From Octopus bimaculoides (taxonomy: Eukaryota): a stretch of DNA of 48,505 nt. Within the stretch, counting starts at the first letter, position 1. Every line of letters begins with the position of its first letter. A program made the position numbers and the translations under genes. The stretch spans positions 5,182,176-5,230,680 of the forward strand of contig NC_068988.1 in the NCBI RefSeq assembly GCF_001194135.2, given 5' to 3'. Positions 10,960 through 41,519 of this stretch are shown here, piece by piece. The notes below the pieces were generated by a model that worked only from the letters and a program-made list of their open reading frames with translations, made no database searches and was not told the DNA's origin.

Positions 10960-12080
10960 TTTGAAAAATTGTCACGCTGCTTCTTAAATCCTGGATAGAT
11001 TTGATACGTGTTTTATTCACACTCCAGTGGAACCCTACCATCAACGAAACACTGGTCTTCTACCCTTTTCTGTCCTCTACTCTCACACCTACACCTTTCA
11101 TTCAAGCATCCTCCCATTTAAAAAGAAACTCCTCTGAAAATTCTAATTTCTACTCTCACTTCATAGCCACCATACCACCTCTCTTATCCTCTAACAGAGA
11201 TGACAATTCCTATAACCATTCAGTTAGTATTTCACTATCTCTCATCCATGCCCAACAAATGCGCTGCCTGCATATATCACACCTCCCTGTACAGCATTAA
11301 GAGGGACCAAACCCCAATCCTTCTACTTCATTATCCAAAACTTCAGCTGCACATTCAATGTACTCTATTGCATTTGTTGTTGTTCGCACTTCGTCGCTTA
11401 CGACGTCGAGGGTTCCAGTTGATCTGATCAACGGAAAAGCCTGCTCGTGAAATTAACATGCAAGTGGCTGAGCACTCCACAGACACGTGTACCCTTAACG
11501 TAGTTCTCGGGGATATTCAGCGTGACACAGTGTGATAAGGCTGACCCTTTGAATTACAGGCACAACAGAAACAGGAAATAAGAGTGAGAGAAAGTTGTGG
11601 TGAAAGAGTACAGCAGGGTTCGCCACCATCTCCTGCCGGAGCCTCGTGAAGCTTTAGGTGTTTTCGCTCAATAAACACTCACAACGCCCGGTCTGGGAAT
11701 CGAAACCGCGATCCTATGACCGCGAGTCCGCTGCCCTAACCACTGGGCCATTGCGTCTCCACTCTATTGCATTTAAACCCTACAGAACCCTCTGCCTCGG
11801 TGAACGAGGTCGCCACCAAGAGAATCACTCCCGCAAACACGATCGTAACGTTATCCAACGAACTCTGAACAACCAGTTTACCCATCTTCTCAGTATATTT
11901 AGGCATTTCATTAGCCCTCTTTCGGCATTTCCGTCCAAAACGGGCCATCACACTCCAACAGACACAAACAACACCACATATTCACCATGTTCGCGAGATT
12001 TGAACAAACGACTCGCTTTCTCTTCTATCTCACGCCACCAACACAACCACTTATATTCATGGACATCCAAACTATAATAA
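10960..12080 (+). mobile_element. Probable Penelope-like pre-RT ORF remnant, interrupted by a SINE C
   Basis: Loose motifs SRC(F)LNPG, SRDLNKRLAF, SWTS and YLEYL occur in the order expected for PLE N-terminal regions. Weak similarity. Confidence 0.35.
11376..11760 (-). mobile_element. tRNA-derived SINE family C, full length, 14-bp TSD
   Basis: Head GGAGACGCAATGGCCCAGTGGTTAGGGC (A box) and GGTTTCGATTCCC (B box); (CAA)n-type tail; exact TSD ACTCTATTGCATTT at 11362-11375 and 11761-11774. Confidence 0.92.
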
Positions 12081-12283
12081 TTATCTAGAGTATCTAAAGA
12101 AAAATATTTTATTTATCTTTTATTTATCATTTCATTTTTCCACTTTTACCATTTTTGTTGCGACTATAGAATGTCTTTCGAAGAATATATTTACTATTAT
12201 TTAGATTTTGTTATTTTTTTAAATTTCTCTCATTTTTACTAAAATTGAATGAGTATGTGTCTATACGCGTGTGTGTGTATGGA

Positions 12284-12335
<52 letters not shown>

Positions 12336-12483
12336 AGCGAGAGAGAGAGAGAAAGAGAGAGTGTGTGTATCTGTGTGTACGCACAGGAGAGCATATATGA
12401 ACATCAGGTACCCATTTATATACGTCACCTCAAGCACATATGTGTGCCTGAGGCCCCTACAAAGCATATGTACACCTATGCAT

Positions 12484-12524
<41 letters not shown>

Positions 12525-12689
12525 TTACTGCCAGACACAATCTCATTGCAGCTATACCTAAGGAATAAATCCCCTTCTCTATCTATCTATCTTTCTATCT
12601 CCTGTCTATATATCTAACGTTACATCAAACATTTCGTCTTTCTTTTTCCCGCTCAATAACCATTTTTCCTTTCATCCTCCTCCTCCTCT

Positions 12690-12732
<43 letters not shown>

Positions 12733-14122: not shown

Positions 14123-14676
14123 NNNNNNNNNNNNNNNNNNNNNNNNNNNNNNNNNNNNNNNNNNNNNNNNNNNNNNNNNNNNNNNNNNNNNNNNNNNNNN
14201 NNNNNNNNNNNNNNNNNNNNNNNNNNNNNNNNNNNNNNNNNNNNNNNNNNNNNNNNNNNNNNNNNNNNNNNNNNNNNNNNNNNNNNNNNNNNNNNNNNNN
14301 NNNNNNNNNNNNNNNNNNNNNNNNNNNNNNNNNNNNNNNNNNNNNNNNNNNNNNNNNNNNNNNNNNNNNNNNNNNNNATATATATATCCGCGTACACGCA
14401 CGCATGCACATATATAAGAAACTATATTTAATACTTACGTATACATTATGTATGTGTGTGTATGTGCACGTGTGGATGTATATGTGGGTGTATGCGTGTA
14501 CGTATGTGTGTGTGTGTGTGTGTGTGTGTGAATGAACGTATGAATGATACATGTGTGTGAGTCACTCAGGAACCTAGAGTTTCGTTCAAATGCACTAATA
14601 TACACATAGACATGCGTGTAAGTGTGTACAAAGCCGTATATAAGTGCGCGCGGGCGTATGAGAGAGAGAGAGAGAG

Positions 14677-17989: not shown

Positions 17990-18545
17990 CGAACCTGACT
18001 TTTGGTATCGTTCCTGTATTTTTGTGTTTGTGTGTTCGCCCATGCTGCCGCCATCCTGGTAGTTGTTGTTGTTATTGTTGTTGTTGTTGCTGTCGTTGCT
18101 ACTGCTATTGCGCATCACTCTCACCAAGTCTGCTATAAGAATATTGAACTTGGCCTTGTCCGCAATAGCTGTGTTCTTGTGGAGCAGGTAGCCAAGGCCA
18201 TGGGCTTGACATAATGGGAGTGGAGGATCTAGACCTTACTGTGCTTGGTTTCCAGCCAGAGTTCCGTGTCTAAAACTGGTAGCCTATAGTTGGGGTGCTT
18301 GTTAGGGTAGTCAATCGTTAGTTTAATACTCTGGTGGATGGAGTTAGCTATTTGTTGGATGCTCTCCATGTGAGCTTCTATATCATCAACGTTGTCTTGT
18401 AGGGTAGCTTTGGTTACTATGTTGATATCATCCACATAGCAGGAGTACATGGTTAGGGTTATGGAGTTCTCTGCTAATTTCCCTTTGAGTCTCCTACCCC
18501 ACCATACCATAAATAGGTTAGCCACATCGCTAGTTATACTGACAT
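17990..18545 (-). mobile_element. Penelope-like RT and thumb fragment, second lineage
   Basis: VSITSDVANLFM...YVDDINIV...DYPNKHPNYRLPVLDTELW (ORF track 18229-18627), then ILHSHYVKPMA and KFNILIADLVRVMRNS, then QERYQKSG. Confidence 0.8.
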
Positions 18546-18782
18546 ATATATATATATATATATGTATATGTATGTATCTCTCTCTTTCTCTCTCCCTCTG
18601 TATACATACATACATACATACATACATACATANNNNNNNNNNNNNNNNNNNNNNNNNNNNNNNNNNNNNNNNNNNNNNNNNNNNNNNNNNNNNNNNNNNN
18701 NNNNNNNNNNNNNNNNNNNNNNNNNNNNNNNNNNNNNNNNNNNNNNNNNNNNNNNNNNNNNNNNNNNNNGTACAGGAGATAT

Positions 18783-21290: not shown

Positions 21291-22125
21291 TTGCGGCATA
21301 TAAAGAAGCCTCTCCATGGACAGTATCTACTTCGAAGCCGAAATGCTTATGTAGACCAAGCAACAACCCATCAGTGGCTTAGAAGTTCAGGCCTGGAATC
21401 TGAAACTGAAAGTTTCATCTTGTCGGCACAAGTTCAAATCCTGCTTACCGAAAACTACCAGGCTAACGTTCTTCACAACGGTTCTGACCCTAAATGCAGA
21501 TTCTGCGATACACTTGATGAAGCACTAAACTGTCTCGTCTCGGGATGTCCTGTGCTGACACCAAACGAATACAAAAATCACCACGATAGGGTAGGACAGT
21601 ATTTACATTGGAAAATATGTAAACACTACAAAATCAGCAACCCTGCTTATTGCTGTGAACATCATCCTGAGCCAGTCGTTGAAGGTAAAAATGTCAGTAT
21701 CCTCTGGGATTTTCCAGTCAATACCAACAGAACGATCCAGGCTAATCGACCAGACAAAGTCATTAAAGACAGGGAAGAAAATACTTGTAGACTAATAGAT
21801 GTAAGTGTTCCCACGGATGAAAATATATCCGTAAAGGAATTTGACAAATTAAATAAATATAAGGGCCTGGAAATTGAAATACAAAATATGTGGCATCTTA
21901 AAGCGAGAACTGTTCCTATTATTGTGGGTGCCCCAGTTATGATAAGAAAGACCCTATCAATTTCAATGTCTGTGTTGTATTACATGAAGATATCTCACTA
22001 CTGACCCTGCCACTTCCCTTCCCCAAGCTTTCAGTCATACTGTAACATCTCTTATCCTTCACTCGCCCTAGGACGCTGGGTATGTCTCGGCAAGTGATTG
22101 TAACAAACATGCAGATTAAAAGGAA

Positions 22126-22959: not shown

Positions 22960-23500
22960 TCATTTCTAATATAACATAAAACCTCAAACTTAGAGGAATT
23001 TATACTCAGACCATTGTACTCCAGTACTTGATTGGTATGTGTTGTGTCGACGCCCCCAGGCGAAGAAGTAGGATCTCCAAGACATATAAAGGTAGTCTGG
23101 CCGTGGTAGAGTGTTGAGTAGCAGTCGAGTAGCAGTTGTGTAGCGGTTGAGTAGAGATCATCCGAAGATGCTATTAGAAACCTCGTCGCCACTGTTATGT
23201 CTCAATGCTACACAGTGGTTGTGTGAGCTGCGAATCCTCGTTGTCACTGTTATGTCTCAACGCTACTGCTATCTAGCACTTTCGGATGATCTCTACTCAA
23301 CCGCTACACATCTGCTACTCGACTGCTACTCAATACTCTACCACGGCCAGACTACCTCTATTTATATGTCTTGGGAGATTCTACTTCTTCGCCTGGGAGC
23401 GTCGACACAACAGTATGTTATCTTTAACAAACTTGGAAAAATGAAAGGCAAAGTTAATTTCATCGGGAGATGAAATCGAAGCATAACAGTCATAAAAAAG
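22960..23500 (-). mobile_element. Decayed SINE family B, split by the foldback element
   Basis: Rejoining 23039 to 23418 gives CTCCAGTACTTGATTGGTATGTTATCTTT...ATGAAAGGCAAAGTT, collinear with the B copy at 35467-35680. Confidence 0.65.
23040..23412. mobile_element. Non-autonomous foldback DNA transposon, Ginger-like
   Basis: Termini TGTTGTGTCGAC...GTCGACACAACA; inverted arms 23040-23173 and 23274-23412; TSD GTATG at 23035-23039 and 23413-23417. Confidence 0.85.
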
Positions 23501-23689
23501 ACAAGCCTTTTGTTTGACACTCTAACGATTCTCCGACCCAGCCATATTGATAGTATTAACGTCGTAAGCTGATACAAAAGCACAAGCATATAGGAGCTCA
23601 GACAGTTAATTCTATGACTATTTAGTTTATCCACTTTGGAAAGATTTCTTGTGTAGACACAAGTCCAGAAATTTGGCGGGAAATGGACA

Positions 23690-24111
23690 ATCGATGATAT
23701 TGATCTCAATACTTGATTGGTATTTTTTTATCGATTTCGGAAGAATGAAAGTTAAGGTTGACCTTGACAGGATTTGAACTGAGAAAGTAAAGAGCTGAAA
23801 CGAATAACGCAACATATTTTGCTTAAGGTTCCAAGGAATCGCTCAACTTGCGACGAATTTGAACTCAAAACGTAGAACTAAAGACTTTTCTTGTCCACAG
23901 TTGAGGTTTCTTCCTTTTGACGACAGAGACCGTTGATTTGGAGGAATGACGCTGTTGATGAAAGACGACATAGACTATTAATAGTATTTTATCGACCACC
24001 GATATATGAAAAAGAAAATCTATTCGCGGGATTTGAACCAAGAACGTAAAGGGATATAACCAAAATGGTGAAAGGTGTTTGGCATGGTGCTCAGTTGATT
24101 CTGCCGTCTAC
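23690..24111 (-). mobile_element. Two further decayed SINE B copies (~23690-23836 and ~23975-24111)
   Basis: TATTTTTTTATCGA...ATGAAAGTTAAGGTTGACC...GATTTGAACT and TATTTTATCGACC...GGATTTGAAC...GATTCTGCC. Confidence 0.6.
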
Positions 24112-30174: not shown

Positions 30175-30361
30175 TAGTAGTAGTAACTAACAACTGTGGT
30201 TGTTAACAGTAATTTCTCAGAAGACCAACAAATTTGTGGAGGTGGTGGGGGGAGTTAATCGATTACAAACCAATTCGATTATCAGCAACAACATCAACGA
30301 TCTGGTAGAAATAGCAGCTAAATATTCATCGTTGTAGCGTAGGATAAAGTTCTTTCTGTAA

Positions 30362-30670
30362 TGAGTTCAAATCCCGCCGAGGTCTAGTTTGACTTTCATC
30401 CTTTCAGGGTCGAGCTGGCAGAGTGGTTAGCACGCCGGGCGAAATGCTTAGCGGTATTTCGTCTGCCGCTACGTTCTGAGTTCAAATTCCGCCGAGGTCG
30501 ACTTTGCCTTTCATCCTTCGGGGTCGATAAATTAAGTACCAGTTGCGTACTGGGATCGATCTAATCGACTGCCCTCCTCCCCAAAAAATTCGGGCCTTGT
30601 GCCTGGAGTAGAAAAGGATCCGATAAAATACAACAAACGGTCGGGCCTTGTGTCTCAGAAGTTTTATAGA
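30362..30670 (+). mobile_element. Well-preserved SINE B (30411-30620) nested in an older SINE B
   Basis: The old copy reads ...CTTTCAGGGTCGA | ...CGATAAAATA. The inner copy has an exact A box TGGCAGAGTGG and a full body and tail. Confidence 0.85.
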
Positions 30671-31545: not shown

Positions 31546-32100
31546 GATCATCCAGACTATTACTTACTACCATGAACTAAACTGCAGCAGTAGTAGTAGT
31601 AGTAGTAGCGCAGCTGATTCGAAGAACTACTTTATTGACCAGATTTATGAAGTCGAGCCAGAATATGAATGTTGGTAAGGCCTCTGTGTCGGGTTGTGGT
31701 AAGTCAGATAACAGAAGGAGTGGGAGGAAAGTGTTAGTAGAAGGCAGGGGTGTTGGTGAGAGAGGTAACTGATAAACACTCAAAGGAAATGTTTACCCTC
31801 AGCTTCTCTTCTTGTATCACAACTTTTTAGATAAGAAGGAAGGGCTTGTGATTCAGCGAGTTTGAGTATGGCTGTACTTATTTTTGGTGGTGAGCGATAT
31901 CGGAGTTCACACCCACACTTTCGTATAATCCTATCTCACCAAACGAGTTTCAGGATTAGAGAGATATGCACCACATTCTGCCAGAGACTCGGTTCCACAA
32001 CCTTTCCCCGTGATAAAAAGGAAATGATTGTCTTATAGAAAAAGGGGTCAGGGATAGAAAGGTATTAGTCTACGTTTATAGACCCCCAAATATACTATTC

Positions 32101-32437
32101 TCTCTTTATTCTCTCTTTACTCGTTTCAGTCATTTGACTGCGGCCATGCTGGAGCACCGCCTTTAGTCGAGCAAATCGACCCCAGGACTTATTCTTTGTA
32201 AACCTAGTACTTATTCTATCGGCCTCTTTTTGCCGAACCGCTAAGTTACAGGGACATAAACACACCAGCATCAAGCGATGTTGGGGGGGGGGACAAACAC
32301 AGACACACAAACAAACACACACATATACATATATATATATACATATATACGACGGGCTTCTTTCAGTTTCCGTCTACCAAATCCACCCACAAGGCTTTGG
32401 TCGGCCCGAGGCTATAGTAGAAGACACTTGCCCATGG
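32101..32437 (-). mobile_element. SINE family A, little diverged; head lies in the gap
   Basis: Near-consensus tail and body up to CTTGCCCATGG at the gap edge. Confidence 0.92.
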
Positions 32438-32889
32438 NNNNNNNNNNNNNNNNNNNNNNNNNNNNNNNNNNNNNNNNNNNNNNNNNNNNNNNNNNNNNNN
32501 NNNNNNNNNNNNNNNNNNNNNNNNNNNNNNNNNNNNNNNNNNNNNNNNNNNNNNNNNNNNNNNNNNNNNNNNNNNNNNNNNNNNNNNNNNNNNNNNNNNN
32601 NNNNNNNNNNNNNNNNNNNNNNNNNNNNNNNNNNNNNNNNNNNNNNNNNNNNNNNNNNNNNNNNNNNNNNNNNNNNNNNNNNNNNNNNNNNNNNNNNNNN
32701 NNNNNNNNNNNNNNNNNNNNNNNNNNNNNNNNNNNNNNNNNNNNNNNNNNNNNNNNNNNNNNNNNNNNNNNNNNNNNNNNNNNNNNNNNNNNNNNNNNNN
32801 NNNNNNNNNNNNNNNNNNNNNNNNNNNNNNNNNNNNNNNNNNNNNNNNNNNNNNNNNNNNNNNNNNNNNNNNNNNNNNNNNNNNNNNNN

Positions 32890-32923
<34 letters not shown>

Positions 32924-33129
32924 AATGTATGTGTCTGTGTTTGTCCCCCCAACATCGCTTGACAACCGATGCTGGTGTGTTTACGTCCCCTTAACTTAGC
33001 GGTTCGGCAAAACAGACCGATAGAATAAGTACTAGGCTTACAAAGAATAAGTCCCGGGGTCGATTTGCTCGACTAAAGGCGGTGCTCCAGTATGGCCACA
33101 GTCAAATGACTGAAACAAGTAAAAGAGTA
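32890..33129 (+). mobile_element. SINE family A, little diverged, 3' half
   Basis: TTTGTCCCCCCAACATCGCTTGACAACCG...GTCAAATGACTGAAACAAGTAAAAGAG. Confidence 0.92.
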
Positions 33130-34700: not shown

Positions 34701-35466
34701 TTGTGAAAAGAATAATAATTTAAAATAAAAATGGAATTAGAATCAAATTAAATTTTTAATTATTTATAAAACATAATCAATAAAGGCAAGGCAAAAACTA
34801 CCTAACTAAAACAAGTAACTAATAAAATGTCCTAACAGCAGACAAACTAAATAATCCATTATTAATGAAACGGCCAACGTGTTTGTTACTTGAGAATAAC
34901 TGATGATGAAATATATGAGTGAATGAGCACGGAAGCGAAAATCAACTTAAGGAAAATTGTAGTCGAATTCTAAAGGCAGAGTTAAATGTAAAGTTTCAAT
35001 GAAACTGAAAAACATTAAAAAATAAACGTTACTCTGGATTCCCTTATACTGATCATCAGGCAGAAATGAACTCTTGAAATATTGCAAAGGTTTTTAATTC
35101 TTCTGTGAGAATCAGAAGGCAAATAAGCATTTAAAGTTTATTGAGCAGGTGATTATCACATTTTAAACTCGATGGAAACTGCCGAGTGAATCGAGCGAAC
35201 TTTGACATAAATAATGTAAATATAATAAAGCAGAACGAACGGGCGACGGAAAGCAGACATAATAAGCTCTGCTGCCAGGTAATATCAGGTGTAAACCAAT
35301 GTAGACTGAGAGGAATAAAATGAATGAGTATAGCTGTTCTAGACGATGAATGTAGACGAGAGAGTAAAAGAGAGTTTTTTCTCAGAAAAGGGAGAGAGGA
35401 AGCAGAAAAGGGAGAGTGATTAAGAAAGGTAGGGAGACGAGAAAGGTTCTAGATCATTGAAATATG

Positions 35467-35680
35467 GATTTCAAATTTTAGCACAAGGCCAGTAATTTCG
35501 GGGTAGGGATCAATCGATTACATCAACTCCAGTGCTCAACTGGTACCTATTTTATCGACCCCGAAATGATAAAATGCAAAGTTGACCTTCGCGGAATTTG
35601 AACTCAGAGCGCAGACATGGATGAAATACCGCTAAGCGTTTTGCCCAGAGTGCTAACGATTCTGCCAGCTCGCCGCCTTG
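35467..35680 (-). mobile_element. SINE family B, full length, 16-bp TSD
   Basis: TSD AGATCATTGAAATATG (35451-35466) / AGATCTTTGAAATATG (35681-35696); head AAGGCGGCGAGCTGGCAGAATCGTTAGCAC. Confidence 0.92.
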
Positions 35681-41195: not shown

Positions 41196-41519
41196 NNNNN
41201 NNNNNNNNNNNNNNNNNNNNNNNNNNNNNNNNNNNNNNNNNNNNNNNNNNNNNNNNNNNNNNNNNNNNNNNNNNNNNNNNNNNNNNNNNNNNNNNNNNNN
41301 NNNNNNNNNNNNNNNNNNNNNNNNNNNNNNNNNNNNNNNNNNNNNNNNNNNNNNNNNNNNNNNNNNNNNNNNNNNNNNNNNNNNNNNNNNNNNNNNNNNN
41401 NNNNNNNNNNNNNNNNNNNNNNNNNNNNNNNNNNNNNNNNNNNNNNNNNNNNNNNNNNNNNNNNNNNNNNNNNNNNNNNNNNNNNNNNNNNNNNNNNNNN
41501 NNNNNNNNNNNNNNNNNNN

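What the first reader, a model, noticed from the sequence alone, without database searches (positions are those of the whole stretch)
23035..23417. Ginger-like foldback element: TGT...ACA ends, ~135-bp arms, 5-bp TSD
The 373-bp element has near-identical arms (about six substitutions and two small indels by eye) and a provable empty site, because the host SINE B rejoins across one GTATG. TGT...ACA termini with 4-5 bp TSDs and long inverted arms are established for Ginger1/Ginger2-TDD transposons, whose transposases are related to LTR integrases. The arms contain an 11-bp tandem (GAGTAGCAGTY-like, four units). The spacer holds two 31-bp direct repeats (23181-23211 and 23236-23266, three C/T differences), which are candidate transposase-binding sites. 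If transcribed it would form a long hairpin, a likely ADAR or small-RNA substrate.
Basis: partly seen in the sequence, partly recalled or inferred. Interest (0 to 1): 0.7.

Follow-up and report, generated by a model that had tools for sequence, protein, structure and literature searches.

The report
Small hairpin transposon inside a SINE
This is a real but ordinary 373-bp non-coding "jumping gene" remnant (a MITE) that landed inside an older repeat; its ends resemble those of Ginger2-type transposons, but that family assignment could not be proven.

Summary
Window 23040-23412 is a 373-bp foldback element with TGTTGTG...CACAACA ends. Its arms are 134 and 139 nt and differ by 6 substitutions and 2 indels. 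There is a 100-nt spacer with a 35-nt direct repeat, an 11-bp tandem array in each arm, and a GTATG duplication on both sides. Removing the element and one GTATG best restores the host SINE-like repeat. It encodes nothing and is the only copy in the window, so it is a non-autonomous cut-and-paste transposon (MITE). The Ginger reading is only partly supported. Ginger1 is excluded because its TSD is CCGG. I recovered five integrase-bearing Ginger2 elements from public contigs. All have TGTYR ends (one has the identical heptamer TGTTGTG) and 96-349-bp TIRs with internal subrepeats, like this element. All five make 4-bp TSDs, mostly TATA, not 5 bp. Similarity to them stops after 7-8 bases. No other copy and no autonomous partner could be reached, because the host genome is not in the searchable collections. 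Verdict: an ordinary MITE, probably Ginger2/TDD-like, of low interest.

The parts
23035..23039 (.). Left copy of the target-site duplication, GTATG
   Evidence: Direct reading. One copy best restores the host repeat.
23040..23173 (.). Left terminal inverted repeat (arm), 134 nt, starting TGTTGTGTCGAC
   Evidence: Arm alignment, inverted-repeat pairs I1, I2 and I5, terminus search.
23113..23154 (.). 11-bp tandem array in the left arm (GTTGAGTAGCA, GTCGAGTAGCA, GTTGTGTAGCG, GTTGAGTAGAG). The units match terminal positions 2-12 at 6-8 of 11 bases.
   Evidence: TRF period 11, 3.8 copies, score 63. Unit-versus-terminus comparison.
23174..23273 (.). Non-palindromic spacer (the loop of the hairpin)
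   Evidence: 100 nt between the arms. Fold shown.
23177..23211 (+). Spacer direct repeat, copy 1 (35 nt)
   Evidence: Family D2.
23232..23266 (+). Spacer direct repeat, copy 2 (35 nt, 89% identical to copy 1)
   Evidence: Family D2.
23274..23412 (.). Right terminal inverted repeat (arm), 139 nt, ending GTCGACACAACA
23293..23333 (.). Mirror copy of the 11-bp tandem array in the right arm
   Evidence: TRF period 11, 3.7 copies.
23413..23417 (.). Right copy of the target-site duplication, GTATG
   Evidence: Direct reading.
22962..23034 (+). Host SINE-like repeat, the part left of the insertion
   Evidence: Aligns with copies at 23640-23830, 30340-30660(-), 6380-6580(-) and 35440-35660.
23418..23513 (+). 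Host SINE-like repeat, the part right of the insertion
   Evidence: Same alignments.

Best explanation
A 373-bp non-autonomous cut-and-paste DNA transposon (a foldback-type MITE) inserted into an older, already diverged copy of a SINE-like repeat and duplicated 5 bp of target, GTATG. It has no coding capacity, so a transposase supplied in trans by an autonomous relative must have moved it (inferred). That enzyme would recognise the TGTTG... ends. It probably also recognises the subterminal 11-bp repeats, which resemble the terminal sequence (inferred). The best candidate is a Ginger2/TDD-type transposase, a DDE enzyme related to retroviral integrase. Such enzymes join TGT...ACA ends to target phosphates staggered by 4-5 bp, and gap repair then leaves the short duplication. 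The element looks old and inert: the arms are 4.7% diverged. Any RNA hairpin role would be a by-product of being transcribed, not its function.
For: Shown: the inverted arms, the TSD and the restored host repeat. There is no protein-family or homologue signal for its ORFs. Termini TGTTG...CAACA fit the published Ginger/Gypsy pattern TGTNR, and the arm length lies within the published 50-180 bp for Ginger2 TIRs (PMC2836005). Five elements that I delimited around Ginger2-type H2C2+rve genes were used as references: L004, L005, L008, L009 and L010. All five start TGT(T/C)R. L005 starts with the identical heptamer TGTTGTG and ends CACAACA. All five have 96-349-bp TIRs with internal direct subrepeats that repeat the motif next to the terminus. 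The MITE's four 11-bp units are likewise the best matches in the arm to terminal positions 2-12. The target has a TAT core, GTATGT, one mismatch from the published Ginger2 target RTATAY. A 5-bp TSD is documented for TDD-4 and TDD-5, and '4 or 5 bp' is quoted for Ginger2. Ginger2 is annotated in an octopus genome (526 kb in O. vulgaris; PMC13282606 supplement), which is relevant if the host is an octopus, as its SINE suggests to me from memory.
Against: There is only one insertion, so the family's TSD length is unknown. All five reference Ginger2 elements and the published metazoan Ginger2 give 4-bp TSDs, mostly TATA, not 5 bp. Sequence similarity to the references ends after 7-8 of the first 11 bases, and blastn of the MITE against all fetched loci finds nothing. 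No autonomous partner, no other copy and no integrase remnant in the window was found. Three terminal bases plus a TSD length is a weak key for classification.
Confidence: 0.55

Rival explanations
1. It is a MITE, but of another or a still undescribed superfamily. The TGT...ACA ends and the 5-bp duplication would then be coincidental resemblances to Ginger2/TDD.
For: The TSD length disagrees with all five reference Ginger2 elements and with published metazoan Ginger2. Only 8 of the first 11 terminal bases match the best reference, so the Repbase filing rule is not met. Unclassified TIR families are common in octopus repeat libraries (123 families, 12.4 Mb).
Against: In the published TSD tables read here, 4-6-bp TSDs together with TG...CA-type ends go with the integrase-related groups. 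From my own knowledge, Transib has the 5-bp TSD but needs CACWRTG ends, which are absent here, and hAT, Mutator, P and Merlin make 7-10-bp TSDs. The TIR architecture matches the Ginger2 references.
Confidence: 0.33
2. It derives from LTR-retrotransposon ends or was mobilised by an LTR-retrotransposon integrase. Such integrases also use TGT...ACA ends and make 4-6-bp duplications.
For: The end motif and TSD length are typical of Gypsy/Copia/BEL integration.
Against: LTRs are direct repeats, not inverted ones. The arms here are 134-139-nt inverted repeats. The inner ends of the arms do not end in CA. No RT, RNase H or integrase coding sequence adjoins the element, and no primer-binding site or polypurine tract is evident in the 100-nt spacer.
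Confidence: 0.05
3. It is not a transposon but a local palindromic duplication or an assembly artefact.
For: It is a single copy in 48.5 kb. The assembly is a draft with six N gaps.
Against: The arms differ by 6 substitutions and 2 indels, whereas artefactual palindromes are perfect. The borders are precise, the 5-bp direct repeat is exact, and the host repeat is restored after excision.
Confidence: 0.03
4. It has been exapted as a hairpin-RNA gene (an endo-siRNA or miRNA-like precursor, or an ADAR substrate) and is retained for that role.
For: The predicted hairpin is very stable, -271.5 kcal/mol with z = -28.
Against: Every long-TIR MITE folds this way. There is no Rfam match in the window. 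The arm differences are not compensatory. No expression data are available.
Confidence: 0.04

Closest known systems
Ginger2/TDD DNA transposons and their MITEs (Bao, Kapitonov & Jurka 2010; Ginger2_NA MITEs of Bombyx and Rhodnius, Zhang et al. 2013)
   Same: TGTNR...YNACA ends: TGTTG here, TGTTACGG in the insect MITEs, and TGTTGTG in reference element L005. Long TIRs with subterminal repeats. A short TSD in a TAT-containing target. Non-coding derivatives of 0.3-0.7 kb are documented.
   Different: The TSD here is 5 bp (GTATG). Metazoan Ginger2 and all five references give 4 bp (TATA-like); 5 bp is known only for Dictyostelium TDD-4/5. No sequence similarity beyond the first 7-8 bases. No autonomous partner identified.
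Ginger1 DNA transposons
   Same: TGTNR ends and 40-270-bp TIRs.
   Different: Ginger1 TSDs are 4 bp and highly specific (CCGG, or CCGT/ACGG). GTATG does not fit.
Transib DNA transposons
   Same: 5-bp TSD (from my own knowledge of the family).
   Different: Transib ends are CACWRTG...CAYWGTG. This element starts TGTTGTG, so the defining end motif is absent.
Foldback (FB-like) elements and long-TIR MITEs in general
   Same: The arms make up 73% of the element, carry short tandem subrepeats, have no coding capacity, and can form a perfect-looking hairpin.
   Different: Drosophila FB makes 9-bp TSDs and has kb-scale arms (from my own knowledge). 'Foldback' describes a shape, not a transposase family.

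Membership tests
Ginger2/TDD superfamily | Termini 5'-TGTNR ... YNACA-3' (PMC2836005) | tested here: met
   TGTTG...CAACA. Five integrase-bearing references show TGT(T/C)R.
Ginger2/TDD superfamily | TSD of 4 bp (metazoan, RTATAY target) or 5 bp (TDD-4/5) | tested here: inconclusive
   One insertion with 5 bp, GTATG. The length fits TDD-4/5 and the quoted '4 or 5 bp', but 5 of 5 references have 4 bp (GTTT once; TATA four times, one of them of ambiguous length inside a (TA)n run).
Ginger2/TDD superfamily | TIRs of about 50-180 bp | tested here: met
   Arms of 134 and 139 nt. References have 96-349 nt with internal subrepeats.
Ginger2/TDD superfamily | An autonomous relative with the same ends encoding an H2C2 zinc finger plus DDE integrase-like transposase | not testable with these tools
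   No remnant in the window (tblastn with seven published Ginger2 cores plus TDD-4, best E 0.06). A Ginger2 profile search returned 1105 proteins, but none could be tied to this element.
Ginger2/TDD superfamily | Repbase rule for non-autonomous elements: same TSD length and terminal positions 1-11 matching a classified element with at most 1 mismatch (PMC4455052) | tested here: inconclusive
   Against the five references available, the best is L005, with 8 of 11 bases and a TSD of 4 versus 5, so the rule is not met with them. The Repbase library itself could not be searched.
Ginger1 superfamily | 4-bp TSD of CCGG or CCGT/ACGG | tested here: not met
   The TSD is GTATG. Criterion.
MITE (non-autonomous TIR transposon) | Small size, TIRs, TSD, no coding capacity | tested here: met
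   373 bp, TIRs and TSD. ORFs have no homologues or domains.
MITE (non-autonomous TIR transposon) | Multiple dispersed copies in the genome | not testable with these tools
   One copy in the window. Nothing in the metagenome or viral collections. One hit in prokaryote genomes, judged a chance match.
Transib | CACWRTG terminal heptamer with a 5-bp TSD | tested here: not met
   The ends are TGTTGTG/CACAACA. The criterion is from my own knowledge.
LTR retrotransposon or solo LTR | Direct long terminal repeats, or a single LTR bounded by TG...CA | tested here: not met
   The repeats are inverted and the inner arm ends are not CA.

The most novel reading that the evidence does not exclude
This element represents a metazoan (probably cephalopod) lineage of Ginger2/TDD-type transposons whose transposase makes 5-bp rather than 4-bp target duplications. 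So far that is documented only for the Dictyostelium TDD-4/5 elements. Its long hairpin copies would feed the ADAR or small-RNA pathways of the host.
Probability: 0.15. Interest if true: 0.3.

Novelty: new member of a known kind. Interest (0 to 1): 0.15.

Why it matters
It matters little on its own. MITEs nested in SINEs are routine in repeat-rich invertebrate genomes, and Ginger2 is already annotated in molluscs, including octopus. Two modest points remain. If the whole family makes 5-bp duplications, it would extend the TDD-type stagger to animals. And nested insertions like this one give relative ages for repeat families. The hairpin could be an RNA-editing or siRNA substrate, but that is true of any long-TIR MITE.

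Tried and rejected
1. I translated the arm ORF (23147-23470) and searched the 5.8-billion-protein collection, hoping to reach other copies through called ORFs. There was no candidate.
2. Exact-pattern scans with the terminal 23-mer and an internal 21-mer found nothing in metagenome contigs (cap exhausted) or in viral contigs.
3. A genome-contig scan gave one hit, in a Patescibacteria MAG. Only the 21-nt pattern matches and about one chance hit is expected, so I rejected it.
4. I tried to identify the organism through the RT-like ORF at 21291-22004. The best hits are only 60-67% identical (shrimp, hydrozoan and starfish names), and the exact look-up is not on record. The host is therefore unidentified by tools.
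5. Rfam and tRNA scans of the window found nothing.
6. Full-text searches for the terminal 12-mer and for two SINE strings found no paper.
7. Other elements in the window sharing the terminal 12-mer: matches are at chance level.
8. Ginger2 loci L001, L002, L006 and L007 gave no clean TIRs and were not used as references.
9. A 4-bp TSD reading (TATG) was considered. It needs an unpaired extra G at the right end. A 3-bp reading (TAT) needs G...G ends. Both are less parsimonious than 5 bp.

Full report
**Observation.**
The sequence is exactly as described. Window 23040-23412 (373 bp) begins TGTTGTGTCGAC and ends GTCGACACAACA. The left arm (23040-23173, 134 nt) and the reverse complement of the right arm (23274-23412, 139 nt) align with 6 substitutions and two indels of 1 and 4 bp. 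Five substitutions are transitions and one is a transversion, giving K2P 0.047. TRF finds an 11-bp tandem array of 3.8 units at 23113-23154 and its mirror at 23293-23333. The 100-nt spacer contains a 35-nt direct repeat at 23177-23211 and 23232-23266 with 89% identity. GTATG lies immediately outside both ends. The 30-nt terminus occurs only at the two ends, where 0 matches are expected by chance. blastn of the element against the window finds no other copy. As RNA the element folds into a near-perfect hairpin of -271.5 kcal/mol, z = -28.

**Empty site.**
The flanks belong to a SINE-like interspersed repeat. Four other copies lie in the window, at 23640-23830, 30340-30660(-), 6380-6580(-) and 35440-35660. 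The joined flanks align straight across the junction. I rebuilt the site with zero, one or two copies of GTATG, or with the element left in. The one-copy version scores best against all four paralogues: summed score 216, against 199, 196 and 161. The host copy is only about 65-75% identical to the others, so this is good support rather than base-level proof. The element starts with T and the right flank continues with T, so a 6-bp duplication with asymmetric ends is formally possible. Five bp is the reading that keeps the ends symmetric.

**What it is.**
It has terminal inverted repeats, a target-site duplication, a restorable host sequence and a small size. Its ORFs have no homologues and no domains. 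Together these make it a non-autonomous cut-and-paste DNA transposon, a foldback-type MITE. It inserted after the host repeat had already diverged. The 4.7% divergence between the arms suggests it is not recent, assuming the arms were identical at insertion.

**Which transposase?**
Published criteria are as follows.
- Ginger1: TGTNR ends, 40-270-bp TIRs, 4-bp CCGG or CCGT TSD.
- Metazoan Ginger2: TGTNR ends, 50-180-bp TIRs, 4-bp TSD in the AT-rich target RTATAY.
- Dictyostelium TDD-4/5: 5-bp TSD (PMC2836005).
- A later review gives '4 or 5 bp for Ginger2', 6 bp for Polinton and 3-6 bp for LTR elements (PMC10045372).
- GingerRoot/IS3EU has TA..TA ends and 6-bp TSDs.
- Insect Ginger2 MITEs start TGTTACGGTAAAAGTA and have TATA-like 4-bp TSDs (PMC3845634).

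Ginger1 is therefore excluded by the TSD sequence. Ginger2/TDD remains the best rule-based fit.

**In-session reference set.**
I took seven Ginger2 integrase cores from the supplement of Bao et al. and built a profile from them (A1). I searched the protein collection with it. It returned 1105 proteins at E <= 1e-10, many named 'KRAB-A domain-containing protein 2-like'. I fetched nine loci around hits on long contigs. Five contain a clean TIR-bounded element enclosing the H2C2/rve gene.

| Locus | Coordinates | Size | TIR | Ends | TSD |
|---|---|---|---|---|---|
| L004 | 8909-12703 | 3795 bp | 116 bp | TGTTACG | GTTT |
| L005 | 8898-11305 | 2408 bp | ~96 bp | TGTTGTG...CACAACA | TATA |
| L008 | 7468-9952 | 2485 bp | ~110 bp | TGTTGCA | TATA |
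| L009 | 7382-10451 | 3070 bp | ~349 bp | TGTTAGC | TATA, inside (TA)n, so length ambiguous |
| L010 | 6017-9746 | 3730 bp | ~210 bp | TGTCGTA...TACAACA | TATA |

All five TIRs contain internal direct subrepeats that repeat the motif next to the terminus.

The window element shares several of these features.
- It has the same end pattern, and its heptamer is identical to that of L005.
- It has the same TIR length class and the same architecture.
- Its four 11-bp units are the best matches in the arm to terminal positions 2-12, at 6-8 of 11 bases.

It also differs in three ways.
- Its TSD is 5 bp, whereas all five references have 4 bp.
- Only 8 of its first 11 bases match the best reference.
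- blastn finds no further similarity.

Repbase files a non-autonomous element in a superfamily when the TSD length is the same and positions 1-11 match with at most 1 mismatch (PMC4455052). With the references at hand this rule is not met. The full Repbase library was not available.

**What could not be done.**
No other copy and no autonomous partner was reachable.
- The arm ORF has no relatives in the protein collection.
- Two metagenome scans and one viral scan were empty.
- The single prokaryote-genome hit is a chance 21-mer.
- The window has no Ginger2-like coding remnant.

The tools did not identify the host. The RT-like ORF at 21291-22004 has only 60-67% identical relatives. From memory, the long SINE with an internal microsatellite at 32100-32437 and 32890-33125 is the abundant Octopus SINE, so the host is probably an octopus. 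This is not verified. If it is right, Ginger2 is already annotated in that genus: 526 kb in one family in O. vulgaris, beside 123 unclassified TIR families (PMC13282606 supplement).

**Mechanism (shown versus inferred).**
Shown: the insertion, the 5-bp duplication, the TIR structure and the lack of coding capacity. Inferred: mobilisation in trans by an integrase-like DDE transposase that binds the TGTTG ends and the subterminal repeats, a strand transfer staggered by 5 bp, and gap repair that produces GTATG twice. Binding of transposase to the spacer repeats, and processing of the hairpin by ADAR or Dicer, are conjectures that cannot be tested here.

**Verdict.**
The feature is real and accurately described, but it is an ordinary MITE. 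The 'Ginger-like' label is the best available guess. I put about 0.55 on a Ginger2/TDD-type transposase and more than 0.9 on a TIR transposon of some kind. The label is not established, and the 5-bp TSD is its main discrepancy. Interest is low.

Noticed in passing
window 32116-32230 and 33009-33123 (wider: 32100-32437 / 32890-33125): Two copies of a long SINE with an internal (TA)n/(CA)n microsatellite lie in inverted orientation around the N gap at 32438-32889 (115-nt arms, 94% complementary). This could be two real insertions or a scaffolding artefact. From memory the sequence is the abundant Octopus SINE, which suggests the host.
   Followed up: partly
window 21291-22004 (+): An intact 237-aa ORF resembles the C-terminal part of a non-LTR retrotransposon protein. 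The best relatives are only 60-67% identical and come from very different animals (Penaeus, Clytia and Asterias are named), so this LINE lineage is widely scattered.
   Followed up: partly
window 18229-18627 (-): A 132-aa ORF gives a weak reverse-transcriptase (RVT_1) match (E 0.022, below the Pfam cut-off). It abuts the N gap at 18633-18769.
   Followed up: no
window N runs 1442-2305, 8437-8698, 14123-14377, 18633-18769, 32438-32889, 41196-41519: There are six assembly gaps. Those I looked at (1442-2305, 8437-8698, 14123-14377, 32438-32889, 41196-41519) are bordered by dinucleotide microsatellites (TA, CA, GA). The draft assembly seems to break inside simple repeats.
   Followed up: no
L001 10001-11056 and 13487-17750: A Ginger2-type integrase gene (65% identical to the Littorina Ginger2 core) is followed by two ORFs with Peptidase_C48 (Ulp1) domains. 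Bao et al. report that combination for Ginger1. No TIRs were found within the fetched stretch.
   Followed up: no
L009 1094-2911: Next to the Ginger2 element there is a 605-aa product with precomputed Pfam hits to ADP-ribosyltransferase (ART / ADPrib_exo_Tox) and TPR repeats, on an unidentified ENA contig.
   Followed up: no
L005, L008, L010 flanks: The Ginger2 insertions sit in palindromic targets (for example CATG-TATA-CATG in L008), so inverted-repeat finders overrun the true ends by 4-9 bases. This can mislead TIR calling.
   Followed up: partly
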